A stretch of 64,000 bases of DNA from the IMG/VR virus record IMGVR_UViG_3300030085_002431, positions 1-64,000 of that record. One strand, 5' to 3'. Below, piece after piece: positions 46,902 to 64,000 of this stretch (within the stretch, counting starts at the first letter, position 1; every line of letters starts with the position of its first letter). Made by a program: the position numbers and the translations under genes. The notes under the pieces were generated by a model that did no database searches, was not told the DNA's origin, and saw only the letters and a list, made by a program, of their open reading frames with translations.

Positions 46902-49900
46902 ATGGCAGACTTTAGACTTGGAAGACTAAAATTCAACTGGAGAGGTGACTGGGTAGCAGGAACCGCTTACGTCATCGATGACATCGTAAAGTTTGGTGCA
47001 AATACTTACGTCTGTACCACCAATCATACTTCCGTCACTGATGAAACTACCTGGTATACCACTGACCTAACAAAGTGGTCACTCCACACTGAAGGTATAA
47101 GAGATCGTGGCACTTGGTCAAGTGGTGTTTTTTACAAAATCAATGACCTTGTTACCTATGGAAATACTTCCTATCGTGTAACAACCGCATTTACCTCAAC
47201 AGCACCATTCTCAACAACTTATCTTGTTGAGTATCTCAGAGGATTTGAGTATGAAGATTCTTGGAATAGTTCAACTGAGTATCAGCAAGGTGATGTTGTA
47301 AACTATGGTGGTTATTCATACATTGCTACCAGCATTAATACAAATAAACCACCATCAGATTATCTCTCAGCAGATTGGGATGTAATTACAACAGGTTTTG
47401 ACGTAGTTGGTGCTTATAGTACTACTACAAACTACAAACCAGGTGATGTTGTTCAACGTGGTGGTTATGCTTACGTTGCAATCACAACTTCAATAAATGT
47501 AGAACCAACTCAAACTGGAAGTTGGGACCTTATTGTTAAGGGTATTGATTGGAAAGGTGCTTTCAGCACATCTACCACTTATCAATTGGGTGACGCAGTA
47601 AGTAGAAATAGTAATTCTTATATTAGTGTTGCATCAACTAACACTGGTAATGACCCAGCAACTGATGCTACTGGTGAATACTGGAATCCTCTAACTCAGG
47701 GTTCTGAAACCAATGTCATGACCACTGGTGGTGACATCATTTATCAGTCTGGTGCTGGTCCTACAAGATTACCAGTTGGTGCTGGTGGTTCAGTTCTTAC
47801 TGTTTCTAGTGCTGGATATCCACAATGGGAATCAAATAATGTAACTGATCCTGTTTATTATGTTGCAGAAGAGGGTAGTGATACCAATACTGGTGAAAAT
47901 ATTTCAAATGCATTTGCATCACTAGGTAAAGCACTATCGGTTGCAACTGGAAATGCAACAATTTATGTAAAAGCAGGTGATTACAACGAGACACTACCAC
48001 TAGTAGTGCCTTCTTCTGTAACTGTTGTTGGTGATAACATCAGAACAACAAAAATTAAAGCAGCTAGTGGAAGTGGAAACCACTGGGATATTGGATTAAA
48101 TATCGCAATTACTGATATTACTTTTGGTTCAGTTATTACCTTCTCAAATGGTGCTAGAGGAACATATATTGATTCCGATGCCCATGATAAAAATATTGAG
48201 ATTATCCGTAATATCAATTATCCAGCACCTTCACCATCAACAACAATAACCCACGTTGATAACGTACCATATAATACTAACGTTGTTACTGTAACAACAG
48301 CAGCAAATAGAACAAATGCACAATCCAAGATGTTCTTGGTTAGTGATAAGACAATGCTTAAAGACCTCCAGATGGAAGGTCTAACTGGATATCAAGTAGC
48401 AGGTACTGCATATTCGGCATCTGGTTCTATTAGTGGAACTACTCTAACTTCATCAAATCTAATTTCGGATTTGATTGGAACAACAGTTACTGGTTCTGGT
48501 GTTTCTGCAGCAACTAAAATTGTTAATGTTCTCAATTCAACCACTGCAGAAGTAAGTGTTTCCCAGACCGTTGGTTCTACTACACTTACATTTACTGCAC
48601 CTCCTCAGGACATTAATAATGCAACAGTTAGGGGTATCTTTGTTTCATTGAACCCTTCTACACCAATCACTAAGTCTCCTTACATCTCACAGTGTTCGGC
48701 ATTCTCAACTGCTGGCATGGGTGCGAAAGTTGATGGAAGAGTCCATAGAGCATTCCCACCAGGTAGTTCAACTCCTTCTAATAAGTCAATTGTTTTTGAC
48801 TCATTCACCAACATTCACGATGAGGGTGTTTCTTTCTGGGTTACTAACAATGGTGCTGCAGAATTCGTTTCTTGCTTCAGTTACTATGCTCATATTTCTT
48901 ATGCAGCAACTCGTGGTGGAAGAATCCGTTCACTCGCAGGTAACTCTTCTTGGGGAACTTATGGACTTGTAAGTTCTGGTTACAACGCAGATGAAGCTCC
49001 AGTAAATGGAGTTGTTGAAGGTCTTCAACTTAAGTTTGCTGCTTCTACAGTTACTGGTACAGGATTTGTTGAAGGTGGTAGAATTATTGGTAGTACTTCA
49101 GGTGCTCAAGGACATATTAATTCCTCACAATCTGAAAAACTAATCTATTCATTGATTTCTGCTGGACCTCTTGGTGTTGGTACTGGATTTGCAATGGGTG
49201 AAACCATTACTGCATCTAACGGAACAACAGCAACACTTCTTTCTAATACTGATGCTAACACTGGTATTAATGGATTTACATTCCCAATGTCTGGATTGCC
49301 ATCTACTTTAGAAGAAGGTGGTAGTGTTGAATTCATTACTGGTTCTGGTAATGGTGGTATTAATAATCAAACAGTTACTGGTGCTGACCAATTCACTTAT
49401 GTTGTTTCAAATGTAAGTTACAACGCACCAGATGGTAGAGGGGATTTAGCAGTTACTAGAGGAGCATTGGGTTCTGTTGCTGCTGGTCACACTGGTGGTA
49501 CAACATTCATCACTTCATATCCAGAAACTGGTACTACAGAAACACTATTGACTGCTGCTGCACCAAGTGATACAACAATTTTCGTTTCTAGTTCTTCTGG
49601 ATTCGTACAAAATGGATTTGCAAAAGTTGGTGATGAACTAATGCAAGTCACTAATATTCTTTCTAGTACTTCACTTGAAGTTACTAGAGCTGCACAAGGT
49701 TCTGGTTCTGCTGGTTCTTATAATTCAGGTGCTCCTGTTGTTTCTATTGGTCAATCTGTAGCAGTTTCTTCTGAGTTGTTTAAGGATACTGTAAGTGGTG
49801 ATACAACTCTTCGTGTAAAACCAACTACTGGATTTACAACATCAATGTACATCAAGATTGATTCTGAGTTTATTGATGTTAACTCAGTAACTGCAGATAG

Positions 49901-50432
49901 TCTTGGTCAATCTATCGTTGTTCTTGCTGAAGAAAAAGCAGCAAAGGCATATGATGGACAAGCAGTTAAGATTAGATTCCTGTATTCACAGGGAAGATTC
50001 ACAGGTCACGACTTCTTACAAGTTGGTACTGGTGGAACTTCAACAACAAATTGGCCTGGTATTCCTACACAGGATCCAGTACAAACACAGGAAGTTGTTG
50101 AAGATTTCCCAGGTCGTGTTTTCTACGTATCTGCTGACTCTAACGGTAACTTCCGTGTTGGTAAGTACTTTAAGGTTAATCAGGCAACTGGTTCTGCAAC
50201 CTTGAATGCTTCCGCATTCGACCTATCTGGTCTGACCTCCTTGAGACTTGGTTCAATTGGTGCTCAGTTGGGTGCTCAAATTAATGAGTTCTCAACAGAT
50301 ACTACACTTTCTCAGAACAGTAATGAGAAGGTTCCTACTCAGGCAGCAGTTAAGGCATACATCGACAATGCTGACGCATCTACCAAGAAGACCGCACAGA
50401 GTGAGGGTTACTTCTTCGGTAATAGCCTCTGA
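46902..50432 (+). CDS. long tail-fibre/tailspike-like protein
   Basis: MADFRLGRLKFNWRGDW start; about five WxxxxxYxxxDxVxYxG modules; pectin-lyase-like start (GSDTNTGENISNAFASL...IYVKAGDYNE.LPLVVP); C-terminal INEFSTDTTLSQNSNEKVPTQAAVKAYID. Confidence 0.82.
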   Translation: MADFRLGRLKFNWRGDWVAGTAYVIDDIVKFGANTYVCTTNHTSVTDETTWYTTDLTKWSLHTEGIRDRGTWSSGVFYKINDLVTYGNTSYRVTTAFTSTAPFSTTYLVEYLRGFEYEDSWNSSTEYQQGDVVNYGGYSYIATSINTNKPPSDYLSADWDVITTGFDVVGAYSTTTNYKPGDVVQRGGYAYVAITTSINVEPTQTGSWDLIVKGIDWKGAFSTSTTYQLGDAVSRNSNSYISVASTNTGNDPATDATGEYWNPLTQGSETNVMTTGGDIIYQSGAGPTRLPVGAGGSVLTVSSAGYPQWESNNVTDPVYYVAEEGSDTNTGENISNAFASLGKALSVATGNATIYVKAGDYNETLPLVVPSSVTVVGDNIRTTKIKAASGSGNHWDIGLNIAITDITFGSVITFSNGARGTYIDSDAHDKNIEIIRNINYPAPSPSTTITHVDNVPYNTNVVTVTTAANRTNAQSKMFLVSDKTMLKDLQMEGLTGYQVAGTAYSASGSISGTTLTSSNLISDLIGTTVTGSGVSAATKIVNVLNSTTAEVSVSQTVGSTTLTFTAPPQDINNATVRGIFVSLNPSTPITKSPYISQCSAFSTAGMGAKVDGRVHRAFPPGSSTPSNKSIVFDSFTNIHDEGVSFWVTNNGAAEFVSCFSYYAHISYAATRGGRIRSLAGNSSWGTYGLVSSGYNADEAPVNGVVEGLQLKFAASTVTGTGFVEGGRIIGSTSGAQGHINSSQSEKLIYSLISAGPLGVGTGFAMGETITASNGTTATLLSNTDANTGINGFTFPMSGLPSTLEEGGSVEFITGSGNGGINNQTVTGADQFTYVVSNVSYNAPDGRGDLAVTRGALGSVAAGHTGGTTFITSYPETGTTETLLTAAAPSDTTIFVSSSSGFVQNGFAKVGDELMQVTNILSSTSLEVTRAAQGSGSAGSYNSGAPVVSIGQSVAVSSELFKDTVSGDTTLRVKPTTGFTTSMYIKIDSEFIDVNSVTADSLGQSIVVLAEEKAAKAYDGQAVKIRFLYSQGRFTGHDFLQVGTGGTSTTNWPGIPTQDPVQTQEVVEDFPGRVFYVSADSNGNFRVGKYFKVNQATGSATLNASAFDLSGLTSLRLGSIGAQLGAQINEFSTDTTLSQNSNEKVPTQAAVKAYIDNADASTKKTAQSEGYFFGNSL

Positions 50433-50803: not shown

Positions 50804-50815
50804 TAGGAGGGACCA

Positions 50816-51085
50816 ATGGGAAGATTCGTAGGTTTATCCATCAATAAAGGTGGAGGCGGTGGTGGTAGGCCACTTAATGAGGAGTTTACAAGAGCAACGG
50901 GTATCACTACCGACTCTAGTAACAATGTTACAGCAGTTACATTAGGTGATGTTTCCTATACTAATGTTGGTTATAGCACTGTTGGACTAATCACAGGATT
51001 CACTGAAAATGTCGGTGGTGTCACTAAGGTTTATCAACTGACTTATAATAGTGATAACTATGTTACAAATATTACGGAGGTATAA
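50816..51085 (+). CDS. small hypothetical protein (89 aa)
   Basis: GGAGG RBS at 50806; Gly run then Thr/Val beta-strands. Confidence 0.72.
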   Translation: MGRFVGLSINKGGGGGGRPLNEEFTRATGITTDSSNNVTAVTLGDVSYTNVGYSTVGLITGFTENVGGVTKVYQLTYNSDNYVTNITEV

Positions 51086-51088
51086 TTC

Positions 51089-52147: not shown

Positions 52148-52163
52148 TTTAATAGATATAGTT

Positions 52164-52171
52164 TATAAATA
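52164..52171 (+). promoter_or_regulatory. T4 late promoter, perfect consensus TATAAATA
   Basis: Intergenic, upstream of GGGGA RBS and ATG 52215. Confidence 0.85.
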
Positions 52172-52214
52172 ATCATACACAGAAGAATTTAGTTCAACAC
52201 AGGGGAAACTAACA

Positions 52215-53941: not shown

Positions 53942-53962
53942 TAATCACCTTTGACTTTCTGG

Positions 53963-53970
53963 TATAAATA
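53963..53970 (+). promoter_or_regulatory. T4 late promoter, perfect consensus TATAAATA
   Basis: Heads the glycosyltransferase-carbamoyltransferase-heptose operon. Confidence 0.85.
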
Positions 53971-54012
53971 GGAGTATCAGAAATTTATATTACTTGATTG
54001 GAGTATTTGTTC

Positions 54013-55107
54013 ATGGAGAAAGCATTTTTCATCAATGGTGGAGCAGGGAGAGTTCTCTGCTCCATTCCTGCGCTTGAGCATTATGCGGAAACACATGATG
54101 ACTTTGTAATTGTTGCAGAGTCATGGGGAGAGTTTTATGCAATGAGTCCAAAGCTCAGAGAAAAAGCATTTCCAATTCATCATAAGGGACTATTTAAGGA
54201 CCACCTTAGGGATAAAGAAATCATATCACCAGAACCATATCGTTTGAATGCTTATTTCAATCAAAAAGCAAATTTGATTCAAGCATTTGATATTCTCATA
54301 AATGGTGAAACTGAAGTTCCACCTACAAAAAAATTATCATTAGATATTAATAAAAAAGACCAAATTGTTGGTCATAATATGATTCAGGAAGTCAAAGAGA
54401 CCTTAAAGAAAGATAAAGTAATTGTATTTCAACCTTTTGGAAGCACTGTAGAGGTGCAAGGTAATTTTATAATTGACAGTAGTGGAAGAAGTTTTGAACT
54501 TTCTAATGTAGTTGAAATAATTAAAGAACTACAAAAAGATTATGGTATAATTATTATGTCTCAAGTTCCTATTCCAGGATGGGAACAAATGGGAGTTGCA
54601 TACCCTAAAGATGTAAGTCTTCTTCAGTGGGCAGGAATTATTAATGCTGCTGATTATTTTCTTGGATGTGACAGTGTTGGTCAACACTTGGCACATGCTG
54701 TAGGGAAACCAGCAACAGTTGTTATTGGGTCAACATTTCCAGAAAACATAACATATCCTGATAATAAGGATTTCAATGTTATCGATTTGGGGTTAAACAA
54801 AAGGTTATATAGTCCAATTAGAATGGTCTTTGATGATACTTCAGACAGAGTAAATGAATCCCTAATGGTAATGAATGAATCTGTTCTTAAAAAAATTAAA
54901 AAAGCAATTAAGGATAAGATTGGAGTAAGTAAAAAAACGGTGATTCCGCAACTTTCTCCTAATACTGATAATACACCATTACCCGTCCTTCCTGGAAAAA
55001 AAGCATCAGTAAAATCATCAACGAACGGATTTTCCCTTCCAGGAAAGCAAATAAATAAAAAGAAACCAATTGATGAAATTCTGGAATTAAACGAAATTAA
55101 AAATTGA
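54013..55107 (+). CDS. GT9-like (ADP-heptose:heptosyltransferase-type) glycosyltransferase
   Basis: INAADYFLGCDSVGQHLAHAVGKPATVVIGST matches the GT9 signature; KVIVFQPFGS. ATG 54013 is preferred over TTG 53998 because GGAG lies at 54000-54003. Confidence 0.72.
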   Translation: MEKAFFINGGAGRVLCSIPALEHYAETHDDFVIVAESWGEFYAMSPKLREKAFPIHHKGLFKDHLRDKEIISPEPYRLNAYFNQKANLIQAFDILINGETEVPPTKKLSLDINKKDQIVGHNMIQEVKETLKKDKVIVFQPFGSTVEVQGNFIIDSSGRSFELSNVVEIIKELQKDYGIIIMSQVPIPGWEQMGVAYPKDVSLLQWAGIINAADYFLGCDSVGQHLAHAVGKPATVVIGSTFPENITYPDNKDFNVIDLGLNKRLYSPIRMVFDDTSDRVNESLMVMNESVLKKIKKAIKDKIGVSKKTVIPQLSPNTDNTPLPVLPGKKASVKSSTNGFSLPGKQINKKKPIDEILELNEIKN

Positions 55108-55118
55108 GGTGAATTTTA

Positions 55119-56822
55119 ATGAGTACTATTGTTGCGTGTAATCGTGGGCATAACTCCGCCACGACGTTAGTTATTGATGGGGAAGTAAAGTTTTATATCG
55201 AAGAAGAACGTCTAACCAGAAGGAAGTATGATGGTGCTCCTTTGGCAGGACTATTGAAGGTATTTGATTATGTTGATGAAGTAGACCATCTTATTGTTTG
55301 TCATACGCATAGAGACGGTCCAAAACTGGACTGGACTAGGGAAGATGTATATGTTGGATTCATCCGAAAGATGATGAAAAACAAACCTTTCCAAGTTCAT
55401 TATGTTGATGAAATTCACCATGAGTTACATGCTGCTTGTGCATTTATTAACTCTGGATTTGAAACTGCTGCATGTTTAAGTGTTGATGGTGCTGGTAGTT
55501 TCCTTAAGAGTGATGCTTTTTCAGAGACAGGATATGAATTTGAAACAATTTTCAGAGCATCATATCCATTACAATTTGAGCAAGTTTATCAACATATCGG
55601 AACTCACTCTCGTGTTGGAATGTTACGTTTGGAGGATACTGAAAATAATTCAACTACAGTAGTAACTGAATATCCAGGTATCACAAAAGCATACGAAGCA
55701 ATCACTGATTACTGCGGTTTTACTTCTATTGAAGCAGGTAAAACCATGGGTCTTTCCCCTTATGGAAGAGAGAATCCTGATATTCCACCTTTTATTACTC
55801 ATGATGGGTGGGTAGATAGGTCAGTATTTACACCAACTTTCCCTAATGGTTCAGTGGTCAATAAAGAAAGATTTGATGCTATTAGAGAGGATTCCAATAT
55901 TCATGAAAAGGGTTCATATACTCAGTTCCAAAAAGATATGGCATATAAAATTCAGAGAGAATCTGAAAAGTATATGTTTAATTTAATCAGAAAAGCACAT
56001 GAGTTGACTGGTGAAACAAACTTTTGTATTGCTGGTGGATTTGGTCTAAATTGTGTTGCAAACTATAAGTATTGGAAAGAATTTCCCGATTTTAACATTT
56101 ATTGTGAACCAATTTCTCATGATGGGGGAACTCCTCTTGGTGCAGCAAAAATGTTGCATCTTAGAGAGATTGATTCATATGAACCACCTGCACCTACTAC
56201 TTCTATATACTATGGTCCACAATACGATCCAGCAACTTATGAGAGTGATTTAGTTGGTCTTGATGTTAAAGATACTTCATATGATGATGTTGCAAAATTA
56301 ATTCGTGAAGGTAATATCGTAACCATTTTTCAAGGCAGGTCTGAGGGTGGTCCTAGAGCACTTGGGAATCGTTCTATCCTATTTGACCCAACTATTCCTG
56401 ATGGAAAAGACATTGTTAATCGTGTGAAAAGGAGAGAATTCTTTAGACCATTTGCTTGCTCTATTAAGAAAGAAGCAGCTTGTGATTGGTTTGACCTTGC
56501 TGGTCGTGAGGAAACACCACATATGATGTATGCTGTAGATGCCCTCCCTGGTGTTGCAGAGAAAGTTCCTTCCGTCATCCATGTGGATGGAACATGTAGA
56601 ATTCAAACTGTTACTCCAGAACAGAATGAGCACTACTATAATCTCATTGATGCTTTTGAAAAATTAAGTGAAGTTCCTATTCTCTTCAATACTTCTTTCA
56701 ATCTTGGTGGTGACCCTCTAGTAGAAACAATTGAAGATGCAGTAAACACATTAAACAAGAGTGATATTGAGTATCTTTATCTCCCAGAAATTCAAAAACT
56801 TGTATACATTCCCAACATTTGA
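55119..56822 (+). CDS. NodU/CmcH/TobZ-family carbamoyltransferase 1 (motifs intact)
   Basis: EEERLTR.K, HHELHA, VDGAG, GKTMGL, GGFGLNCVAN, DGG, QGRSEGGPRALGNRSIL, KRREFFRPFA, HVDGTCRIQTV, NTSFN. Confidence 0.92.
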   Translation: MSTIVACNRGHNSATTLVIDGEVKFYIEEERLTRRKYDGAPLAGLLKVFDYVDEVDHLIVCHTHRDGPKLDWTREDVYVGFIRKMMKNKPFQVHYVDEIHHELHAACAFINSGFETAACLSVDGAGSFLKSDAFSETGYEFETIFRASYPLQFEQVYQHIGTHSRVGMLRLEDTENNSTTVVTEYPGITKAYEAITDYCGFTSIEAGKTMGLSPYGRENPDIPPFITHDGWVDRSVFTPTFPNGSVVNKERFDAIREDSNIHEKGSYTQFQKDMAYKIQRESEKYMFNLIRKAHELTGETNFCIAGGFGLNCVANYKYWKEFPDFNIYCEPISHDGGTPLGAAKMLHLREIDSYEPPAPTTSIYYGPQYDPATYESDLVGLDVKDTSYDDVAKLIREGNIVTIFQGRSEGGPRALGNRSILFDPTIPDGKDIVNRVKRREFFRPFACSIKKEAACDWFDLAGREETPHMMYAVDALPGVAEKVPSVIHVDGTCRIQTVTPEQNEHYYNLIDAFEKLSEVPILFNTSFNLGGDPLVETIEDAVNTLNKSDIEYLYLPEIQKLVYIPNI

Positions 56823-56834
56823 TTTTAAAAAATT

Positions 56835-58499
56835 ATGGATAACGAAAAATTCTATCAATTGACATATAATACTAGTGGAACTGCTTCTGCAGTTTTAACT
56901 AAAAATGATACTGTAGACAAGGTTTATATTGAAGAGAGATTTACAAACATGAAGGATAATATTCCTTTAATTTGTCTCAAAGATATTGCTCATGGAAAAT
57001 GCATTTCTCATATGGGAATAACATCAAACGATGATTATTCTGGAAACGAGTGGGCAGTACTAACTAAATTCTTCTCAATTTATAGTGGAAGTACTAGTAA
57101 AGAAAACAGCCAAATTGTAACTCATCAGGAATCTCATTATCTACAATCTCTATCTGCATCACTAAATTCTGGTTTTACAGAACCCCATGTTTTTTGCTTT
57201 ACTAAACCAGGAGCACAGTCTGAGTATGGTAAACCCCATGAAAGTATCTTTTTGATGAATCCAAAAAGAGGAGTTTGTCAACTTGCATTTCGACAAGTTT
57301 TAGGTCCAAATGTTCGAGTTAAGAGAGAAGAAGGCGTTCCAGAAGCATATTACAACAGAAAAACATTTTCTATTTGCAATGCATTTGAATCTATTAAAGA
57401 ATTTACAAATTGTTCAACACTTAAGGAGATGTATGCTGTTGGGCAGTTAGGAACTGATGATAAGATGATTCCTAGCATTCTATCCAAGTGTGGTGCTCAG
57501 ACTTCTCAATTTAAATTAGATGGGAAAAAGCAAATATTCAATGAATATGAATATATTAAGGAAGTAAGTGATGGTAAAAAGAAAAGAGATATTTCTTTAA
57601 ATCTAGTATATCGAATTCAAAAGGATTATGAACGTTATTTGATTGATGCTGTTAATGAATATTTCAGCAGCCAGACTAGAGATGTAGCATCAACGTCAAG
57701 GGAATTAATCATTACTGGAACACTTAACGATAATGTAAGAGCAAATTACTTATTGCTAAAATCTTTAGATGATGATTTTACTCTATATGTTGATCCGATT
57801 TCTAATGAAGTTAGTAATAGTATGGGACTCGCATATGAACTTATAGGTTCTTGTGAGATGGCACCTAAAGGAGTTGATAATTTTTATCTTGGTAGAGAAC
57901 TAGATCCAACTGATTACAATCTACTTGAGCAAGAAGATGAAAAAACTGTAACACCAAAAGAAGTTGCTGAGTTAATTGCAGACGGAAATGTTGTTGCTAT
58001 TGCTCAGGGACGTTCTGAAATAACAGACCATGCTCTTGGAAATCGTTCTATTGTTGCAGACCCAAGAACTATTGAATCTAAACAAATCTTAAGTAGGTCT
58101 AAGTATCAACCAGATCATATTCCATGTATTACATCCGTCCTGGAAGAAAGTGCTAGTGATTGGTTTGACATGGATAAATTGAAGAGTAGTCCAGAAGCAA
58201 TGTATGCAGTTGATGCTCTGGATGTTACTAAAGAACAAGCACAGGGTGCAGTCTATACCGATGGATCAACTAGAGTACAAACTGTTAATGAAGGATATAA
58301 TCAGAATTACTACAATTTAATTAAAGAATTTGGTGATTTGACTGGTGTTCCAATGCTTCTTAATACGTCTCTTAATATGCATACATATCCAATGTGTGAT
58401 AATATGGAAAATATTATGTCATTTATGAGATGCTCTGGAGTAAACTATTTGTATCTTCCAGAAACTGGAAAACTATTGTTTGTGCCTACTGATTCTTAA
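56835..58499 (+). CDS. carbamoyltransferase paralogue 2, full length but with degenerate catalytic motifs
   Basis: Retains QGRSE...ALGNRSI, DGSTRVQTV and LNTSLN but has lost most signature residues (see findings). Confidence 0.82.
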   Translation: MDNEKFYQLTYNTSGTASAVLTKNDTVDKVYIEERFTNMKDNIPLICLKDIAHGKCISHMGITSNDDYSGNEWAVLTKFFSIYSGSTSKENSQIVTHQESHYLQSLSASLNSGFTEPHVFCFTKPGAQSEYGKPHESIFLMNPKRGVCQLAFRQVLGPNVRVKREEGVPEAYYNRKTFSICNAFESIKEFTNCSTLKEMYAVGQLGTDDKMIPSILSKCGAQTSQFKLDGKKQIFNEYEYIKEVSDGKKKRDISLNLVYRIQKDYERYLIDAVNEYFSSQTRDVASTSRELIITGTLNDNVRANYLLLKSLDDDFTLYVDPISNEVSNSMGLAYELIGSCEMAPKGVDNFYLGRELDPTDYNLLEQEDEKTVTPKEVAELIADGNVVAIAQGRSEITDHALGNRSIVADPRTIESKQILSRSKYQPDHIPCITSVLEESASDWFDMDKLKSSPEAMYAVDALDVTKEQAQGAVYTDGSTRVQTVNEGYNQNYYNLIKEFGDLTGVPMLLNTSLNMHTYPMCDNMENIMSFMRCSGVNYLYLPETGKLLFVPTDS

Positions 58500-58501
58500 T
58501 A

Positions 58502-60124
58502 ATGTATATCTTATCCATACATGAATCTCATGATGCAAGTATGGCTCTTATTAAAGATGGGGAGGTTTTAATTAACCTCTCCCATGAAAGATTAAGTCAT
58601 ATAAAGCATGATAGGAGAATTAATTTATTTGCTTCAAAAATAAAACAGTATACAAATTATGTTGATAAGGTTGTTGTAAGTTGTCTTCATAATTCTATAA
58701 AAGAAGTTGATTTTCCACTTTATGCAAACTATTGTGGAATTGATTTTGGTGAGATAGTTGACTATTCTCCGTTTCATCACATATCACATTCATATTTGGC
58801 ATTCAAACATTCAAATTTTGAGAATGCTATTAGTGTTGTTCTTGATGGTGCAGGTTCTGAAAAACCAGAAGTACAGTATCATGGTGTTGCACTCAAAGAA
58901 TGCGAGTCCGCCTATCAAATAAATCCACATATGACTGCTTGCATTTATAAATCATATGTTGGTCAAAGATCTGAAAATTTTGAATTTCCATATGAAGTTG
59001 GTGGAATTGACAGAAGAATTGGTATTGGAATGGCATATAGTGGAATCACAGAGGCTCTTGGATATGGAGAAAATGAAGATGGTAAGACTATGGGATTATC
59101 TGCATATGCATCAGAAGAGCAAATAAATTCTATTCCAAAATTGGTAGAGTTAAGTCATGGTGCTGATGGAAATAAATTTAAGTTATTTCGTGGTGGTGTT
59201 TTAGGATATTGTTCAGCACTTATTGATATACCAAAAGAATTACATGTTGAATATGCTGGAAGAATTCAAAGGGACTTTGAGGAGTATGTTATTCAGTTAG
59301 TTCATGGTATTGTTCAAAAAACAGGGTGTAGGAATATTGTTTTATCTGGTGGTTGTTTCCTTAATTGTGTAGCAAATTTTAAACTAAGAAAATCACTACC
59401 CCCCGAATTTAATATATTTGTCGAACCAATGTCTGGTGATGATGGTATTGCACTAGCTAATGCTTTCATGGTTGATGATATGATCAACCCAAAGAATAGA
59501 AAACTGAATACATTATATCTTGGTAGTCAGTTGGAATATGAGTATACTTTAAGTGATGGAGAGTCTGAAGTAGTAACTACACCAAAAGAAGTAGCACAAT
59601 TAATTTCTGAAGGAAATTGTATTGCTATTGCTCAGGGACGTTCTGAGAGTGGTCCTAGAGCATTGGGTAATCGATCTATATTGTTTGACCCAAGAGATAA
59701 AGATGGTAAGGATAAGGTAAATAAAATTAAAAAGAGAGAATACTTCAGACCCTTTGCTGCTACAGTTCTTCATGAGAATAGTCAACAGTGGTTTGACATG
59801 GATAGTCTTGATGAAAGTCCATACATGACTTATGCTGTAGATGTACTACCAGACAAATCTAAGACAATACCTGCTGTAACACATGTCAATAATACATGTA
59901 GAATACAAACTCTTAAACAGGAACAAAATAAAAACTATTACGAATTAATAAATGAGTTTTATAAGTTGACAGATGTTCCTATGGTATTAAACACTTCATT
60001 CAATCTTGCTGGTGATACTATGGTTGAAACAATAGAGGATGCTTTAAAAACACTAAGACTTAGTGAATTGGAGTATCTTTACTTACCAGAAACTAAAAAA
60101 CTTATTCATGTCCCCAACAAATGA
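58502..60124 (+). CDS. NodU/CmcH/TobZ-family carbamoyltransferase 3 (motifs intact)
   Basis: HESHDAS, HHISH, LDGAG, DGKTMGL, SGGCFLNCVAN, DDG, QGRSESGPRALGNRSIL, KKREYFRPFA, NTSFN. Confidence 0.92.
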   Translation: MYILSIHESHDASMALIKDGEVLINLSHERLSHIKHDRRINLFASKIKQYTNYVDKVVVSCLHNSIKEVDFPLYANYCGIDFGEIVDYSPFHHISHSYLAFKHSNFENAISVVLDGAGSEKPEVQYHGVALKECESAYQINPHMTACIYKSYVGQRSENFEFPYEVGGIDRRIGIGMAYSGITEALGYGENEDGKTMGLSAYASEEQINSIPKLVELSHGADGNKFKLFRGGVLGYCSALIDIPKELHVEYAGRIQRDFEEYVIQLVHGIVQKTGCRNIVLSGGCFLNCVANFKLRKSLPPEFNIFVEPMSGDDGIALANAFMVDDMINPKNRKLNTLYLGSQLEYEYTLSDGESEVVTTPKEVAQLISEGNCIAIAQGRSESGPRALGNRSILFDPRDKDGKDKVNKIKKREYFRPFAATVLHENSQQWFDMDSLDESPYMTYAVDVLPDKSKTIPAVTHVNNTCRIQTLKQEQNKNYYELINEFYKLTDVPMVLNTSFNLAGDTMVETIEDALKTLRLSELEYLYLPETKKLIHVPNK

Positions 60125-60519
60125 AAATATCTTTTGTCAATGGTTGTTTTGATGTATTACATCCAGGACACGTTGAACTTTTAAATTATGCTAGTTCTTT
60201 TGGTGATTACTTAATTGTTGCTATTGACTCAGATAGAAAAGTGGCAGAGATGAAAGGTCCAGACAGACCGATATTCTCTCAATCTGATAGGGCATATATG
60301 CTAAAAGAAATAAGATGTGTTGATGTAGTACATATTTTTGATACTAGACAAGAACTAGAGTCTTTGCTAGATTCATTGAGACCTGATACAATGGTCGTAG
60401 GTTCAGACTGGAAAGGAAAAGAAGTAGTAGGTTCACAGTATGCCAAATCAGTCAAATTCTTCGACAGAATCGGAGACTACTCAACAACAAAAACAATTCA
60501 AGGTTCTTCTTATCGGTGA
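60121..60519 (+). CDS. HldE/RfaE-type heptose-1-phosphate nucleotidyltransferase (stand-alone domain)
   Basis: NGCFDVLHPGH (HxGH), LIVAIDSD..V...KG..RP, VVGSDW, YSTT. Confidence 0.9.
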   Translation: MKISFVNGCFDVLHPGHVELLNYASSFGDYLIVAIDSDRKVAEMKGPDRPIFSQSDRAYMLKEIRCVDVVHIFDTRQELESLLDSLRPDTMVVGSDWKGKEVVGSQYAKSVKFFDRIGDYSTTKTIQGSSYR

Positions 60520-61237
60520 TAGTTGCGAAGACGAGTACATTTATGGTACTTGTAAACGTATAAGTCCAGAAGCACCAGTTCCTATTATGGACTATTCCAG
60601 ACTGGAAACAAAATCTGGAATGGCAGGTAACGTATGTTTGAACTTACAGTCATTTGAAATGGACATAACGTTCTTAACTAACTCTGAGAAATTGGTTAAG
60701 ACACGATTTATTGATGAAAAGTCAAATCAGCAAATTCTTAGAGTTGATAATGAAGAGACTGTAAAACCGTTATTACTTCCAATTAGCACCGAAGGTTTTG
60801 ATGCAGTTGTAATTTCAGATTATAACAAAGGATATCTAAGTTATTCTAAAATTGAAGAAATAGTTTCTGGTTCCACATGCCCAGTGTTTATTGACAGTAA
60901 AAAAAGATTTTTACCTAACAAAGAAAATTGTTTTGTAAAAATAAATGACTTAGAGTATAGTCAATTGGATGAAAAGTGTCATATTGATAACTTAATTGTC
61001 ACTAAGGGTGCTGAGGGATGTTATTATAGAAATACTTTGTATCCAGCACAGAAAGTAAATGTTTATGATGTTGTCGGTGCAGGAGATACCTTTTTGGCAG
61101 CACTAGTTTTTAGTTATCTTGCTAGAGGTGATATGAGTGAATCAATTCGTTTTGCAAATAAAGCAGCAGCAGTTGTTGTTGGTCAACCAGGTACATATGT
61201 TTTACAGGAGGAAGATATAAATGAGATATGTAGTTGA
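60440..61237 (+). CDS. HldE/RfaE-type PfkB sugar kinase (heptose-7-phosphate kinase-like, stand-alone)
   Basis: LIGDSCEDEYIYG...RISPEAPVP, GMAGNV, ISDYNKG, VYDVVGAGDTFLAAL. Start codon uncertain. Confidence 0.88.
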   Translation: MPNQSNSSTESETTQQQKQFKVLLIGDSCEDEYIYGTCKRISPEAPVPIMDYSRLETKSGMAGNVCLNLQSFEMDITFLTNSEKLVKTRFIDEKSNQQILRVDNEETVKPLLLPISTEGFDAVVISDYNKGYLSYSKIEEIVSGSTCPVFIDSKKRFLPNKENCFVKINDLEYSQLDEKCHIDNLIVTKGAEGCYYRNTLYPAQKVNVYDVVGAGDTFLAALVFSYLARGDMSESIRFANKAAAVVVGQPGTYVLQEEDINEICS

Positions 61238-61550
61238 TATTGATGCAACCATTTGTACCCCAGGTACATGTGAAGCATGTAGATATGAAGGTTCCACACC
61301 AATTCAAGATAGGATTGATAAAATAAATAAGTTGTATGATGATGGGCATATCATCAAATACTTTACTGCCCGAGGCATGGGAAGGTATAATGATGATGCG
61401 GAAAAGGCACGGGAAAAATTTTACGGACTAACCAAAATGCAATTAGATATTTGGGGATGTAAGTATCATGAACTTATTCTCGGAAAACCATCAGCAGACT
61501 ATTACATAGATGACAAAGCTGTAAATTCAGATGACTTCTTCAAGACCTAG
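61221..61550 (+). CDS. minimal capless HAD-superfamily phosphatase
   Basis: VDIDATIC (motif I DxDxT), FTARG (II), GKPSADYYIDDK (III/IV). Confidence 0.82.
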   Translation: MRYVVDIDATICTPGTCEACRYEGSTPIQDRIDKINKLYDDGHIIKYFTARGMGRYNDDAEKAREKFYGLTKMQLDIWGCKYHELILGKPSADYYIDDKAVNSDDFFKT

Positions 61551-61911
61551 AGCAGGACAGGACATCAAATTCGTACCTAAGGGGTGGGGATTTGAAAAAT
61601 GGATTGTAAACTGTGAGCAATACTGCGGAAAACTTTTGTATATTGCTAAGGGAAAAAAGTGTTCATGGCACTACCACAATAAAAAAGATGAAGTTTTTTA
61701 TGTTCAAAGTGGTAAGATTAAAATTAAGTATGGTTGGTCAGACAATCAAGAATTAGGTTCCATAGCAATTTTGGAACGTGGTGATAAGTTTCACGTTCCA
61801 ATTGGTATGAGACATCAGATGTATGGTATGGAAGACACCGAACTGTTTGAGTTCAGTACAGAGCACTTTGACTCTGATAGTATTCGTGTCATCCCAGGAG
61901 ATACTCTTTGA
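61531..61911 (+). CDS. cupin-fold protein, sugar-isomerase-like
   Basis: VPKGWGFEKWI, CSWHYHNKKDEVFYV, FHVPIGMRHQM, EFSTEHFDSDSIR. Confidence 0.82.
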   Translation: MTSSRPRAGQDIKFVPKGWGFEKWIVNCEQYCGKLLYIAKGKKCSWHYHNKKDEVFYVQSGKIKIKYGWSDNQELGSIAILERGDKFHVPIGMRHQMYGMEDTELFEFSTEHFDSDSIRVIPGDTL

Positions 61912-62680
61912 CAGTTTTAAACTTACGGTTGCCCCATTCTTTTTGGGCACAAGTATAAATTTGATATTTACCTTTTAAATGGTCGGGGAATGGAATGTAT
62001 TCTATATCTCCACCATATTTTTTTATGCAGCATTCCGCTACGTGCTGGAAACTTACTGGGGCACTAGTTCCAAGGTCATAGATTCCTGAACCTTTTTTAT
62101 TATCCAGGACAACTTTAACAATGTCATCAACACAAATAAAGTCCCTTAGGAAGTCTTGAGAACCTTCAAATAATTTTAGTTTTCCAGTCTCTTCTATTTC
62201 TTTAGCAAATTTACTTACTGGACTTGCTTGGTTTCCTTTATCATTCTCACCATCACCATAGACATTGAAGTAACGGAATCCTTGAATTAATGGAAATCTA
62301 TCCATATTATCTTGAACCCAATAATCTGTTGTTACTTTGGATAATGCGTAGTAATTGAGTGGGTTGATAATTCCTTGTTCATTACCATAAACAGAAGCAG
62401 ATGAAGCATACTTAACTGGAATTTCATGTTTTGCTGCTTGCTCAAACAACCACTCACTAAATTCAATATTGAATGTAAATATTTGCTTTAAGTTTGTATT
62501 TGTAGTAGAGGACATGGCACCTTGGTGGATAATGCATTCTACTTCTTTCCACCTATAGAAATTTTTTCTCCAATGCCAACTATTGTTCTTCTCTACTTCT
62601 ATTACTTCTTTACCTTTTTTCTTTAGGGCGGCAAGAAATTTCTTTCCAATGAATCCCTTAGAACCAGTTAATATAATCAT
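61889..62680 (-). CDS. hldD: ADP-L-glycero-D-manno-heptose 6-epimerase-like extended SDR
   Basis: MIILTGSKGFIG (GxxGxxG), IIHQGAMSSTT, YASSASVYG, YALSK (YxxxK), GFRYFNVYG, RDFICVDD, YQIYTCA. Confidence 0.85.
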   Translation of the reverse strand: MIILTGSKGFIGKKFLAALKKKGKEVIEVEKNNSWHWRKNFYRWKEVECIIHQGAMSSTTNTNLKQIFTFNIEFSEWLFEQAAKHEIPVKYASSASVYGNEQGIINPLNYYALSKVTTDYWVQDNMDRFPLIQGFRYFNVYGDGENDKGNQASPVSKFAKEIEETGKLKLFEGSQDFLRDFICVDDIVKVVLDNKKGSGIYDLGTSAPVSFQHVAECCIKKYGGDIEYIPFPDHLKGKYQIYTCAQKEWGNRKFKTVKEYLLG

Positions 62681-62687
62681 ATAAATA
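62680..62687 (+). promoter_or_regulatory. T4 late promoter, perfect consensus TATAAATA
   Basis: 29 nt upstream of ATG 62717; its first base overlaps the start codon of the minus-strand epimerase. Confidence 0.8.
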
Positions 62688-62716
62688 CTAAAAATAGCTG
62701 TATATTGGGGTATAAA

Positions 62717-64000
62717 ATGGCCTTTGGCTTACTACAATCAATTATACCAGAAGTTGATAAGAACACAACCTTATATGGTGCTCCAAGTCAGACATTGGCG
62801 CAAGGAAAGATTTCAATTTCTAGTAAAAATTATAATCCAGTACGAGTACGTGTTTGCTTATCAACCACATCTGCGTATGATGATGTTGAGTATTTAGAAT
62901 ATGATAGGTATATCAATTATGGTGAAACCTATGAGACTGGAATTATTAGTGTTGGAAACGGCCAACGAATTGTAGTACGAGCTGACCATACAAAAGTAAA
63001 TTTTGTATTTACTGGAGAAGAATTTAATGAAGGTTCTGGAATACTCAATGGAAATTATTCTGGATTATTGGGTAATGTAATATCTACTAATTCTGATGAT
63101 AAGTTACTATACTCTGTTCCTACTGGATTAAAGGCCAATACAGCAACATTAAACATCGTTAATTTAAAATCATTCCCAGCAAAAGCAAGGATTGGTTTAT
63201 TAAAATCCGTAGATGCAATTACAGATTTTAGTTCTGAGGATTATATTGAATATGATGTAGAAATTGGACCAAATGATACTTATGTAAGGTCTGACTTAAA
63301 ATTAGATGAATCACAAAAAATTGTTGTATCATCATCTAATGATTCTAGGCTACAGTTTTTAGTTCATGGAAGACTTAGATCTACTCTTTCAGGAGGACAA
63401 GATGACTTTGATGTAGATGGAAGATTATATGTTGCTGGTCCTGCAGGTATTGGAACTGTCCCAAGAGCAAAACTGGATGTAATTGGTGGTGCTCTTATTT
63501 CTGGTCAGGCAAAAGTTGGTCTAGGAATGACCATCGGTAATGAACTATTTGTTGGTCAAAACTTATCAGTTGGTGGGACAATTACTGGAACATTTGACCC
63601 AACAGATATAAGCAATGCAATTTTCACACAAGGTTCATTACCTGCTGTTGATGGTTCTGCACTGACTGGAGTTACCGCACAGGGTACTGGTGTTGTAATT
63701 CAAGATGACACAGTGCCTCAAGGTACTGCCACTACTTTAAACTTTAATGGTGGTATTGCAGCAGTAACTAATGGTAGTACTGCTACTGTTAGTTTGGCAA
63801 ATCAAGTTAATGTTCTTCAAACATTGACTGTTAATAGTAATAAATTTATTGTGGAAGGTGCAACTGGAAATACTACAGTTGCTGGAAATGTCAATGTTCA
63901 ATCAAATCTCACAGTTTCTGGTCATATTGATGTACTAAATAGTCATATCGTGAATGTTGGGTATCCAACATCAGATCATCATGCGGTGTCAAGGTCATAT
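62717..64000 (+). CDS. fibre-like virion protein, 5' part (runs off the window)
   Basis: Open from ATG 62717 to the window end (428 codons, MAFGLLQSIIPEVDKNTTLYGAP...); two EYIEYD-type domains, then GSLPAVDGSALTG and GVVIQDD..PQGTATTLNF fibre motifs. Absent from the ORF track because there is no stop. Confidence 0.82.
   Translation, partial: MAFGLLQSIIPEVDKNTTLYGAPSQTLAQGKISISSKNYNPVRVRVCLSTTSAYDDVEYLEYDRYINYGETYETGIISVGNGQRIVVRADHTKVNFVFTGEEFNEGSGILNGNYSGLLGNVISTNSDDKLLYSVPTGLKANTATLNIVNLKSFPAKARIGLLKSVDAITDFSSEDYIEYDVEIGPNDTYVRSDLKLDESQKIVVSSSNDSRLQFLVHGRLRSTLSGGQDDFDVDGRLYVAGPAGIGTVPRAKLDVIGGALISGQAKVGLGMTIGNELFVGQNLSVGGTITGTFDPTDISNAIFTQGSLPAVDGSALTGVTAQGTGVVIQDDTVPQGTATTLNFNGGIAAVTNGSTATVSLANQVNVLQTLTVNSNKFIVEGATGNTTVAGNVNVQSNLTVSGHIDVLNSHIVNVGYPTSDHHAVSRSY

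What the first reader, a model, noticed from the sequence alone, without database searches (positions are those of the whole stretch)
56835..58499. Middle carbamoyltransferase looks like a preserved pseudo-enzyme
Seen, comparing paralogue 2 with 1 and 3: N-terminal H(N/D) absent; HHxxH becomes HQESH; DGAG becomes TKPG; GKTMGL absent; GGxxLNCVAN becomes TGTLNDNVRAN; DxG becomes EVS; ExGPRALG becomes EITDHALG; KxRExFRPFA becomes KYQPDHIPCI. The frame is nonetheless intact and full length (554 aa). Established: in TobZ-type enzymes the His/His/Asp/Asp set binds the metal of the Kae1-like domain, and the YrdC-like domain forms carbamoyl-adenylate. Inference: both sites are lost, so the protein is kept as a scaffold, substrate-presenting or regulatory subunit of a heteromeric complex.
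Basis: partly seen in the sequence, partly recalled or inferred. Interest (0 to 1): 0.7.

Follow-up and report, generated by a model that had tools for sequence, protein, structure and literature searches.

The report
Conserved dead carbamoyltransferase paralogue in cyanophage
The middle of three tandem carbamoyltransferase genes in a large marine cyanophage keeps the full enzyme fold and is under purifying selection, but it has lost the residues that do the chemistry, so it is a preserved pseudo-enzyme whose job (probably helping its active neighbours) is still unproven.

Summary
The ORF at 56835-58499 (554 aa, "CT2") is a full-length TobZ/NodU-type carbamoyltransferase paralogue lying between two canonical copies (CT1, CT3) in a 250-kb T4-like cyanophage.

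- **Catalytic residues lost:** CT2 lacks the general-base His, all four Fe ligands and three invariant Arg of the adenylation domain.
- **Rarity:** at 14 key sites CT2 deviates at 9. Of 117 diverse family representatives, 113 deviate at one site or none.
- **Fold kept:** pLDDT 91; Z 36 to GdmN/TobZ over about 500 residues.
- **Conservation:** orthologues at 92, 65, 65 and 46% identity are all intact and always in the CT1-CT2-CT3 order. ML omega is 0.13, and neutrality is rejected (2dlnL = 599).
- **Relaxed constraint:** CT2 is less constrained than CT1 (0.04) and CT3 (0.11), most clearly in the YrdC-like domain (0.107 against 0.019 and 0.036).
- **Adenylation site only partly lost:** K423 and the SxN motif remain, and the most divergent orthologue keeps KxR.
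- **Heteromer idea untested:** the complex prediction gave no verdict. Relatives with a single CT1-type gene show that CT1 needs no CT2, so CT2 and CT3 appear to have come as a pair.
- **Possible re-tooling:** 45 clade-specific invariant residues, 40 of them in the N-domain, leave open that the protein was re-tooled rather than simply inactivated.

The parts
56835..58499 (+). CT2: degenerate TobZ/NodU-type carbamoyltransferase paralogue, 554 aa (P0002)
   Evidence: ORF and translation. PHROG 1601 match over residues 17-544. AF2 model pLDDT 91.4. VIA Z 36.5 to GdmN and 35.7 to TobZ over about 500 residues.
56835..57932 (+). CT2 Kae1-like (ASKHA) domain, residues 1-366; the transfer site is lost
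   Evidence: No Pfam Carbam_trans_N hit, but the fold aligns to Kae1/TsaD at Z about 20 and to the CTases. Atlas features match viral Carbam_trans_N clusters at 0.94. ML omega 0.138.
57933..58496 (+). CT2 YrdC-like domain, residues 367-554; partly degenerate
   Evidence: Pfam Carbam_trans_C 131 bits, against 193 and 203 in CT1 and CT3. ML omega 0.107, against 0.019 and 0.036.
56877..56879 (+). G15 in place of the general-base His (GdmN H27, TobZ H14)
   Evidence: Gly in all five orthologues; His in 106 of 117 diverse representatives. Role of the His: PMC9633730; the TobZ H14N variant traps the adenylate (PDB title).
57123..57146 (+). HQESHYLQ (97-104). The former HHxxH is S100-H101-Y-L-Q104; H97, E99 and H101 are invariant in the clade
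   Evidence: Alignments. Secondary-structure register, CT2 against CT3. Clade-specific invariants.
57201..57212 (+). TKPG in place of DGAG (third Fe ligand and oxyanion-hole loop)
   Evidence: Asp in 115 of 117 representatives; T/T/S/T/T in the clade, and the next three positions vary.
57423..57440 (+). KEMYAV in place of GKTMGL; the Lys becomes E198, invariant in the clade
57714..57746 (+). TGTLNDNVRAN in place of GGxxLNCVAN. N300 and N304 are kept; R302 is a clade-specific invariant
57807..57815 (+). EVS in place of DxG (fourth Fe ligand; E/E/D/E/N across the clade)
58017..58040 (+). EITDHALG in place of ExGPRALG (the Arg of GPR becomes His)
   Evidence: Arg in 114 of 117 representatives; H/H/H/H/I in the clade.
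58101..58130 (+). KYQPDHIPCI in place of KxRExFRPFA. K423 is kept; R425 becomes Q, E426 becomes P, R429 becomes I
   Evidence: P0008 keeps K-L-R. KxR...SxN is the catalytic signature of TsaC/YrdC domains (PMC9654439; PMC10321239).
58362..58376 (+). NTSLN: the retained T511-S512-x-N514 (SxN motif; TobZ T529/S530)
   Evidence: Invariant in the clade and in the family.
55119..56822 (+). CT1: canonical carbamoyltransferase, the ancestral copy of the module
   Evidence: All 14 key residues intact. 65% identical to the single CT of S-CAM1 and 64% to that of AG-345-P14. ML omega 0.041.
58502..60124 (+). CT3: canonical carbamoyltransferase, starting 2 nt after the CT2 stop
   Evidence: All 14 key residues intact. 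AF2 pLDDT 92.2. ML omega 0.107, with N-domain 0.123 and C-domain 0.036. Junction sequence.
53998..55107 (+). GT9-like (heptosyltransferase-like) protein; probable start is the ATG at 54013
   Evidence: Weak Pfam GT9 and NCBIfam heptosyltransferase III hits. phrog_8954. Start codon.
60121..62680 (.). ADP-heptose pathway genes: HldE-C adenylyltransferase (60121-60519), HldE-N kinase (60440-61237), 109-aa phosphatase-like protein (61221-61550), cupin (61531-61911), HldD epimerase (61889-62680, minus strand)
46902..50432 (+). Tail fibre protein with CBM_5_12 repeats, flanking the module upstream
62705..64000 (+). Tail-fibre-like protein flanking the module downstream (runs off the window)
   Evidence: phrog_11338, E 5e-40.

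Best explanation
CT2 is a catalytically inactive, full-length paralogue of TobZ/NodU-type O-carbamoyltransferases. It is specific to one lineage of large T4-like cyanophages.

Shown or strongly inferred from sequence:
- In the common ancestor of the clade it lost the carbamoyl-transfer site of the Kae1-like domain: the general-base His and the 2-His/2-Asp Fe site.
- It has since been losing adenylation residues of the YrdC-like domain step by step.
- The fold and about a third of all positions are held by purifying selection.

Inferred, not shown:
- It entered the phage's tail-fibre-flanked ADP-heptose/glycosyltransferase/carbamoyltransferase module together with the active CT3.
- It most likely acts as a non-catalytic partner of CT3 (possibly also CT1), binding or positioning the heptose-bearing acceptor or a nucleotide. 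The parallel is TsaB serving TsaD in the same Kae1 superfamily.
For: Loss of chemistry:
- G15, S100, Q104, T123 and E325 replace residues that are H/H/H/D/D in 106-115 of 117 diverse representatives. R399H, R425Q and R429I replace residues that are Arg in 113-114 of 117.
- Roles of these residues: GdmN H27, H133, H137, D156, D333 (PMC9633730); the KxR...SxN and HxxH...D motifs (PMC9654439); TobZ H14N, K443A and S530A variants.
- The former Fe-ligand positions vary among orthologues (S/S/T/V/N; Q/Q/T/N/R; E/E/D/E/N), as expected for an abandoned site.

Preservation:
- AF2 pLDDT 91.4, pTM 0.92; Z 36.5, rmsd 2.5-2.8 A over about 500 residues to GdmN/NovN/TobZ/VtdB.
- Orthologues at 92/65/65/46% identity, all intact and all in CT1-CT2-CT3 order.
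- The only indel seen in population contigs is an in-frame TTC.
- NG86 omega 0.29-0.40 with bootstrap intervals below 1. ML omega 0.134; the likelihood-ratio test against omega = 1 gives 2dlnL = 599.
- The sequence recurs near-identically in at least 20 marine metagenome runs from 2014 to 2025.

Relaxed constraint, consistent with lost catalysis: C-domain omega is 0.107, against 0.019 (CT1) and 0.036 (CT3). The clade has a long stem of 1.49 substitutions per site.

Pairing with CT3:
- S-CAM1, S-SSM7, Sf-FS3 and AG-345-P14 carry the same module with one full CT of CT1 type directly before hldE-C. CT1 therefore works without CT2, and CT2+CT3 form the lineage-specific insert.
- The CT2 stop and CT3 start are 0-8 nt apart in all lineages.

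Precedent for cooperation in trans: S-SSM7_123 and SfFS3_107 are Kae1-only copies with an intact transfer site and no YrdC domain.
Against: - No direct evidence of binding: the complex prediction gave no verdict.
- TobZ-type enzymes are not known to need a partner. The GdmN homodimer depends on a C-terminal domain that is absent here.
- CT1 and CT3 each have complete sites, so neither obviously needs help.
- K423, T511/S512/N514, R404 and R480 are retained, so some nucleotide chemistry cannot be excluded.
- The 45 clade-specific invariant residues include H97, E99, H118, H135, R153, R175, K176, E198 and R302. They suggest a new site rather than a passive scaffold.
- Only five lineages are available, and synonymous sites are near saturation for the deepest pairs (dS 1.2-1.4).
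- No transcript evidence was found.
- The AF2 alignment was dominated by canonical enzymes, so the model cannot show whether the pockets are still open.
Confidence: 0.5

Rival explanations
1. CT2 is a re-tooled protein, not a scaffold. The Kae1-like domain has acquired a new conserved polar site near the old metal centre (H97, E99, H101, H118, H135, R153, R175, K176, E198, R302). It acts alone as a new enzyme or as a specific binder of the heptose glycan, ADP-heptose or a nucleotide.
For: 45 positions are invariant in the five orthologues yet occur in under 10% of canonical enzymes, and 40 of them lie in the N-domain. The N-domain omega (0.138) is no higher than that of the active CT3 N-domain (0.123). 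The fold is fully retained.
Against: The positions that replaced the Fe ligands and the DGAG loop vary among orthologues. No known catalytic motif is recreated. Five sequences give limited power to call a position 'invariant'.
Confidence: 0.2
2. CT2 is half-alive. The YrdC-like domain still binds ATP and carbamoyl phosphate and makes or holds carbamoyl-AMP, which it hands to another protein's Kae1-like site.
For: K423, T511, S512, N514, R404, R480 and Q482 are retained in all orthologues, and P0008 keeps the whole KxR/SxN tetrad and H474. The C-domain is the better conserved half (44% invariant against 28%). Kae1-only transferases that would need such a donor exist in related phages.
Against: The Arg of GPR, the Arg of KxR, E426 and R429 are each at least 95% conserved across 117 diverse representatives, and all are replaced in four of five orthologues. 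C-domain omega is 3-6 times that of the active paralogues. CT1 and CT3 have their own intact YrdC-like domains, and the genome has no Kae1-only copy.
Confidence: 0.12
3. CT2 is still an ordinary O-carbamoyltransferase that uses unconventional residues.
For: Full-length fold and purifying selection.
Against: It lacks the general base, all four metal ligands and three invariant Arg at once. Among 117 diverse representatives, no sequence outside the degenerate ones departs at more than 2 of the 14 key sites.
Confidence: 0.04
4. CT2 is a decaying pseudogene, or filler DNA, whose frame is open by chance.
For: It has the highest omega of the three paralogues, and the abandoned catalytic positions drift.
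Against: Neutrality is rejected (2dlnL = 599). The 554-567-codon frames are intact in all lineages down to 46% identity, in AT-rich DNA. Only an in-frame indel was seen. The fold is predicted with high confidence.
Confidence: 0.03

Closest known systems
TobZ / NodU / CmcH-type (class III) O-carbamoyltransferases (TobZ, GdmN, NovN, VtdB; Pfam PF02543 + PF16861)
   Same: The same two-domain architecture and fold over the whole length (Z 35-36, rmsd 2.5-3.0 A). The C-terminal Pfam domain scores above cut-off. CT2 sits in tandem with two canonical members.
   Different: The general-base His, the 2-His/2-Asp Fe site and the GKTMGL Lys are lost, as are the Arg of GPR, the Arg of KxR, E426 and R429. 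The N-terminal Pfam model no longer detects it.
TsaB (YeaZ), the non-catalytic paralogue and obligate dimer partner of TsaD in t6A synthesis
   Same: Both belong to the Kae1/TsaD ASKHA superfamily. Both are paralogues that have lost metal and nucleotide binding and always occur together with the active enzyme (PMC9654439). The CT2 N-domain aligns to TsaD/Kae1 chains at Z about 20.
   Different: TsaB is a single truncated domain, is universal in bacteria, and its heterodimer is solved. CT2 keeps both domains at full length, is confined to one phage lineage, and no interaction has been shown (one search gave no verdict).
Kae1-only carbamoyltransferase copies of cyanophages (S-SSM7 SSSM7_123, Sf-FS3 SfFS3_107)
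   Same: They are second CT copies in the same tail-fibre-flanked heptose module of related phages, which implies a division of labour between CT paralogues.
   Different: They have an intact transfer site (H, H, H, D, D, K all present) but no YrdC-like domain. CT2 is the reverse: both domains are present, and the transfer site is dead.
Other degenerate family members found here (P0213/P0189 pair, P0184; marine metagenome contigs)
   Same: They show the same pattern: the general base, the Fe ligands, the GPR Arg, the KxR Arg and R429 are lost. P0213 and P0189 also keep the KxR Lys, the SxN motif, R404 and R480, as CT2 does; P0184 does not keep the SxN motif or R480. P0189 lies next to a Peptidase_S74 tail-fibre gene.
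   Different: At most 35% identical to CT2. The free tree places them apart from the CT2 clade, but an AU test cannot reject a single origin (p = 0.37). Their contigs are too short to show whether a canonical copy lies alongside.
Phage 5-hydroxymethylcytosine carbamoyltransferase (MetaGPA study, PMC8670742)
   Same: It is a phage-encoded member of the same family.
   Different: That enzyme is active and sits next to thymidylate-synthase-like and deaminase genes. Here the neighbours are ADP-heptose and glycosyltransferase genes, between tail fibre genes.

Membership tests
TobZ/NodU-type O-carbamoyltransferase (active enzyme) | Two-domain fold: N-terminal Kae1-like (ASKHA) domain plus C-terminal YrdC-like domain | tested here: met
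   AF2 pLDDT 91.4. Foldseek TM 0.72-0.78. VIA Z 34.6-36.5 over residues 6-554.
TobZ/NodU-type O-carbamoyltransferase (active enzyme) | Pfam Carbam_trans_C (PF16861) above gathering score | tested here: met
   131.3 bits against a cut-off of 27.
TobZ/NodU-type O-carbamoyltransferase (active enzyme) | Pfam Carbam_trans_N (PF02543) above gathering score | tested here: not met
   No hit at E <= 0.01 for the protein or in a six-frame search of the genome. CT1 and CT3 score 84 and 71 bits.
TobZ/NodU-type O-carbamoyltransferase (active enzyme) | 2-His/2-Asp metal site of the Kae1-like domain (GdmN H133, H137, D156, D333) | tested here: not met
   S100, Q104, T123 and E325. These positions vary among orthologues. 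The register was checked against the CT3 model.
TobZ/NodU-type O-carbamoyltransferase (active enzyme) | General-base His near the N-terminus (TobZ H14, GdmN H27) | tested here: not met
   G15 in all five orthologues.
TobZ/NodU-type O-carbamoyltransferase (active enzyme) | KxR...SxN tetrad of the YrdC/TsaC-like domain | tested here: not met
   K423-Y-Q425, so the Arg is lost; S512-L-N514 is kept. The tetrad is intact only in orthologue P0008.
TobZ/NodU-type O-carbamoyltransferase (active enzyme) | ATP- and carbamoyl-phosphate-dependent carbamoyl transfer | not testable with these tools
   Needs purified protein.
Pseudo-enzyme (inactive paralogue retained by selection) | Clear homology and shared fold with active enzymes | tested here: met
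Pseudo-enzyme (inactive paralogue retained by selection) | Loss of residues essential for catalysis | tested here: met
   9 of 14 key positions are changed, against 0-1 in 113 of 117 representatives.
Pseudo-enzyme (inactive paralogue retained by selection) | Purifying selection and intact orthologues | tested here: met
   ML omega 0.134; 2dlnL = 599 against neutrality. NG86 bootstrap intervals are below 1. The frames are intact in the five sequence types and in every assembly examined.
Pseudo-enzyme (inactive paralogue retained by selection) | Experimentally shown lack of the ancestral activity | not testable with these tools
   Biochemistry required.
TsaB-like non-catalytic partner of an active Kae1-family paralogue | Strict co-occurrence with the active paralogue | tested here: met
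   CT1-CT2-CT3 order on every contig long enough to show it. No CT2-type gene was found elsewhere among 1.84 billion representatives or in the metagenome scan.
TsaB-like non-catalytic partner of an active Kae1-family paralogue | Physical heteromer with the active paralogue | tested here: inconclusive
   Complex prediction of the CT2 and CT3 N-domains gave no verdict. This is evidence neither for nor against.

The most novel reading that the evidence does not exclude
CT2 is not a dead scaffold but a re-tooled Kae1-like protein. A clade-specific, invariant His/Glu/Arg set (H97, E99, H101, H118, H135, R153, R175, K176, E198, R302) would replace the 2-His/2-Asp Fe centre and form a new metal- or ligand-binding site, with a new activity or specific recognition of the phage's carbamoyl-heptose glycan. 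Similar degenerate copies elsewhere (P0213/P0189, P0184) would then mark a wider, unrecognised family of phage proteins derived from carbamoyltransferases.
Probability: 0.18. Interest if true: 0.75.

Novelty: new variant of a known kind. Interest (0 to 1): 0.5.

Why it matters
Pseudo-enzymes are well known, but I found no description of one in the NodU/CmcH/TobZ carbamoyltransferase family; a full-text search for 'carbamoyltransferase' with 'pseudoenzyme' returned nothing relevant.

Phage genomes are under tight size limits, so a 1.7-kb gene for an inactive enzyme that persists down to 46% identity must earn its place.

The gene lies in a conserved but uncharacterised cyanophage module (ADP-heptose synthesis, a GT9-like transferase and carbamoyltransferases) between tail fibre genes. 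The product and target of that module are unknown; candidates are a virion or tail-fibre glycan, or the host envelope.

The natural series of module variants offers a direct way to ask how these enzymes divide labour: a single CT, a CT plus a Kae1-only copy, and the CT1/dead-CT2/CT3 triad. It also lets one ask whether Kae1-like domains need a paralogous partner in general, as TsaD needs TsaB.

Tried and rejected
- **Complex prediction** of the CT2 (1-366) and CT3 (1-353) N-domains: no verdict (score 0.00, 0.43, 0.00). I do not use it either way. The full-length pair exceeds the size cap, and CT1 could not be tried because only one job was allowed.
- **Transcription:** no RNA run was listed as holding the stretch. 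Three same-sample metatranscriptomes laid nothing on it. This is not evidence of absence.
- **Viral-contig scans** with CT2, CT3, P0213 and P0189 found no CT2-type orthologue.
- **Promoter and terminator scan** of 50.4-63 kb: counts equal to shuffled sequence.
- **Independent origin** of the other degenerate copies: the free tree separates them from CT2, but the AU test (p = 0.37) cannot reject one clade, so I claim neither convergence nor common origin.
- **L026,** picked up as a relative of P0213, turned out to be a canonical CT split into N- and C-domain ORFs around a methyltransferase-like ORF. It is not a degenerate copy.
- **L044,** with a 48% best segment, is a canonical CT in two frames.
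- **Population variants** from the contigs of four runs were only partly listed (248 not shown). The 10 non-synonymous to 8 synonymous count for CT2 is therefore illustrative only.
- **Joints** reported at 85% likeness (for example 56611 to 58326) have short sides and probably come from other phages' CT genes. I disregarded them.
- **Model coordinates** are not exposed, so I could not test whether the signature residues cluster or whether the pockets are open.
Full report
**Setting.** The window is the first 64 kb of a 250,613-bp virus record. Its genes match T4-like cyanomyoviruses (Kyanoviridae): P-SSM2, P-SSM5, S-CAM1, S-SSM7. Three tandem, same-strand ORFs encode TobZ/NodU-type carbamoyltransferases:
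- CT1: 55119-56822, 567 aa.
- CT2: 56835-58499, 554 aa. This is the finding.
- CT3: 58502-60124, 540 aa.

These are the only three copies in the genome.

**Checking the observation.** Pfam sees only the C-terminal domain of CT2 (131 bits, against 193 and 203 in CT1 and CT3). It does not see the N-terminal domain, even in a six-frame genome search.

One item needs correction. HQESH (97-101) is not the homologue of HHxxH. Two independent large alignments put HHxxH on S100-H101-Y-L-Q104. The predicted strand-helix-strand elements agree with a constant offset of 8: in CT2 they are 93-97, 100-112 and 118-122; in CT3 they are 81-87, 89-104 and 109-114. So both ligand histidines are gone, and the retained H101 is the non-ligand second His.

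**What the lost residues do.**
- In GdmN the general base is H27 and the Fe ion is held by H133, H137, D156 and D333. These are conserved across class III carbamoyltransferases (PMC9633730).
- The YrdC-like domain makes carbamoyl-AMP, and the Kae1-like domain transfers the carbamoyl group (PMC6022934; PMC9654439).
- KxR...SxN is the catalytic signature of the YrdC/TsaC domain, and TobZ T529 contacts the phosphate of carbamoyl phosphate.
- The PDB holds TobZ H14N, K443A and S530A variants that trap intermediates or substrates.

**How unusual the pattern is.** I took 117 family representatives that share less than 50% identity with one another, from an exhaustive search of 1.84 billion proteins. 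Conservation at the key positions is as follows:
- the five Kae1-site residues are conserved in 106-115 of 117;
- the Arg of GPR in 114;
- the Arg of KxR in 114;
- E426 in 111;
- R429 in 113.

At 14 key positions, 113 representatives show 0-1 deviations, whereas CT2 shows 9. All CTs of cultured cyanophages that I checked are canonical at these positions.

**Fold.** The AF2 model of CT2 is confident (pLDDT 91.4, pTM 0.92). It superposes on GdmN, NovN, TobZ and VtdB over about 500 residues at rmsd 2.5-3.0 A, Z 34.6-36.5 (Foldseek TM 0.72-0.78). Caveat: the input alignment was mostly canonical enzymes, and coordinates are not exposed, so I could not inspect the pockets.

**Orthologues and synteny.**
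- A word-indexed search of 5.8 billion proteins gave four full-length CT2-type clusters at 92, 65, 65 and 46% identity, then a sharp drop to canonical enzymes at 36% or less.
- The exhaustive search added only fragments.
- The metagenome scan added only near-identical copies.
- Every contig long enough shows CT1-CT2-CT3 followed by hldE-C. CT2 is intact everywhere.
- The clade is monophyletic (support 100) on a long stem of 1.49 substitutions per site.
- The window's variant recurs in at least 20 marine metagenome runs from 2014 to 2025. The only indel seen in CT2 among population contigs is an in-frame TTC.

**Selection.** Pairwise NG86 omega:

| Gene | Omega | Source |
|---|---|---|
| CT1 | 0.07-0.11 | |
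| CT3 | 0.18-0.26 | |
| CT2 | 0.29-0.40, all bootstrap intervals below 1 | |

A codon-model ML fit (GY+F3x4, five lineages) gives:

| Gene | Whole gene | N-domain | C-domain |
|---|---|---|---|
| CT1 | 0.041 | 0.053 | 0.019 |
| CT2 | 0.134 | 0.138 | 0.107 |
| CT3 | 0.107 | 0.123 | 0.036 |

Fixing omega at 1 for CT2 costs 2dlnL = 599. CT2 is therefore clearly under purifying selection. The constraint is relaxed mainly in the adenylation domain. Its N-domain evolves no faster than that of the active CT3.

**Pattern of decay.**
- The Kae1-site losses are shared by all five orthologues, so they are ancestral to the clade. The replacing residues now drift (S/S/T/V/N; Q/Q/T/N/R; K/K/D/P/N; E/E/D/E/N), as expected for an abandoned site.
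- The YrdC-like domain decays stepwise. The most divergent orthologue, P0008, still has K-L-R, H474, C479, G397 and G517, while the other four have K-Y-Q, Y/F474, T479, T397 and T517.
- All five keep K423, T511-S512-x-N514, R404, R480 and Q482.
- Against pure decay, 45 positions are invariant in the clade yet rare (under 10%) in canonical enzymes. Forty of these lie in the N-domain, including H97, E99, Y102, H118, H135, R153, R175, K176, E198 and R302.

**Context.** The three CT genes sit in a module bounded by tail fibre genes (46902-50432 and 62705 onward). The module contains:
- a GT9-like protein;
- HldE-C adenylyltransferase;
- HldE-N kinase;
- a 109-aa phosphatase-like protein;
- a cupin;
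- HldD epimerase.

The same module, at the same place between tail fibre genes, occurs in S-CAM1, S-SSM7, Sf-FS3 and the single-cell virus AG-345-P14. There it carries one full CT directly before hldE-C. That CT is of CT1 type: 65, 47, 47 and 64% identity to CT1, against 36-37% to CT3. So CT1 is the ancestral enzyme and works without CT2, and CT2+CT3 are a lineage-specific insertion. The CT2 stop and the CT3 start are 0-8 nt apart in every lineage, whereas CT1 and CT2 are 10-21 nt apart. S-SSM7 and Sf-FS3 carry a second, Kae1-only copy with an intact transfer site and no YrdC domain. Such stand-alone N-domain proteins are common in viruses. Division of labour between CT paralogues is thus already a feature of these modules.

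**Mechanism.**
- Shown: the fold is retained, the catalytic residues are lost, the gene is under purifying selection, and it strictly co-occurs with CT1 and CT3.
- Inferred: CT2 cannot transfer a carbamoyl group and very probably cannot make carbamoyl-AMP.
- Most likely role, about 0.4 on its own: a non-catalytic partner of CT3 (perhaps also CT1) that binds or positions the heptose-bearing acceptor or a nucleotide. The parallel is TsaB and TsaD in the same superfamily, where a paralogue without metal and nucleotide binding is an obligate dimer partner.
- Binding itself is untested.

Rivals, with my estimates, are a re-tooled stand-alone binder or enzyme (0.2), a half-alive adenylation or nucleotide-holding protein (0.12), an unconventional active enzyme (0.04), and a decaying pseudogene (0.03).

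**Comparison and novelty.** CT2 shares fold and ancestry with TobZ-type enzymes but fails the defining catalytic features, so I do not file it as an active member. It fits the sequence-level definition of a pseudo-enzyme. I found no paper describing one in this family. Three other degenerate representatives with a similar loss pattern exist in marine contigs (P0213/P0189, P0184); P0213 and P0189 also retain the same residues as CT2, whereas P0184 has lost the SxN motif and R480 as well. Whether they share an origin with CT2 is unresolved. I rate the finding a new variant of a known kind, with moderate interest. From memory, not tested here: O-carbamoylated heptose is known in the Pseudomonas aeruginosa LPS core, which makes heptose a plausible acceptor.

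Noticed in passing
window 46902-64000; also L016 (S-SSM7), L017 (Sf-FS3), L018 (S-CAM1), L025 (AG-345-P14): A conserved module lies between tail fibre genes in several large cyanomyoviruses. It holds a GT9-like transferase, carbamoyltransferase(s) and a near-complete ADP-L-glycero-D-manno-heptose pathway. Its position suggests glycosylation of virion or tail-fibre proteins, or of the host envelope, but its product is unknown.
   Followed up: partly
window 61221-61550 and 61531-61911: The 109-aa ORF that phage records and PHROGs call 'phosphoheptose isomerase' also matches a capsule-biosynthesis phosphatase family (TIGR01689, E 4.7e-9, far below that family's cut-off). It may therefore be the missing GmhB-type phosphatase, with the adjacent cupin ('cysteine dioxygenase' in PHROGs) possibly acting as the isomerase.
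   Followed up: partly
L016 10403-11512 (SSSM7_123); L017 12326-13483 (SfFS3_107): These are Kae1-only carbamoyltransferase copies (369 and 385 aa) with all transfer-site residues intact but no YrdC-like domain. They would need carbamoyl-AMP from another protein.
   Followed up: partly
P0213 (L022), P0189 (L023), P0184 (L021): Three further full-length family members from marine metagenomes have lost the general base, the Fe ligands and the same Arg residues as CT2. P0213 and P0189 keep the KxR Lys and the SxN motif; P0184 keeps the Lys but not SxN. P0213 and P0189 are sisters at 45% identity, and P0189 lies near a Peptidase_S74 tail-fibre gene. Whether they share an origin with CT2 is unresolved (AU p = 0.37).
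   Followed up: partly
L026 2102-3982: A carbamoyltransferase is split into an N-domain ORF (292 aa) and a C-domain ORF (195 aa, 189 bits). A 163-aa methyltransferase-like ORF sits between them, amid four 2OG-Fe(II) oxygenase genes and a tryptophan halogenase.
   Followed up: no
window 51089-52147 and 52898-53941: Two paralogous genes of unknown function (both phrog_35878, about 350 aa) flank a 227-aa ORF just upstream of the GT9-like gene. The arrangement is conserved in L008, L012, L036 and L037.
   Followed up: no
window 59489-59499 (in CT3): One population contig (run X18) carries a +1 insertion after 59489 and a 1-nt deletion at 59499. This is a compensated frameshift spanning about three codons of CT3, or else an assembly artefact.
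   Followed up: no
window 2725-46022: There is a run of very large ORFs (2594, 974, 930, 1825, 2511 and 1965 aa) in the structural region. G+C rises to 0.40-0.445 around 40-46 kb, against 0.32-0.35 elsewhere; that stretch falls in the 1965-aa ORF (phrog_11522, nine matched stretches).
   Followed up: no
L015 4483-6174: In the most divergent lineage the CT3 copy is only 48% identical to the window's CT3, while CT1 is 81% identical. CT3, especially its N-domain, therefore evolves about as fast as the dead CT2. This may reflect changing acceptor specificity or co-evolution with CT2.
   Followed up: partly
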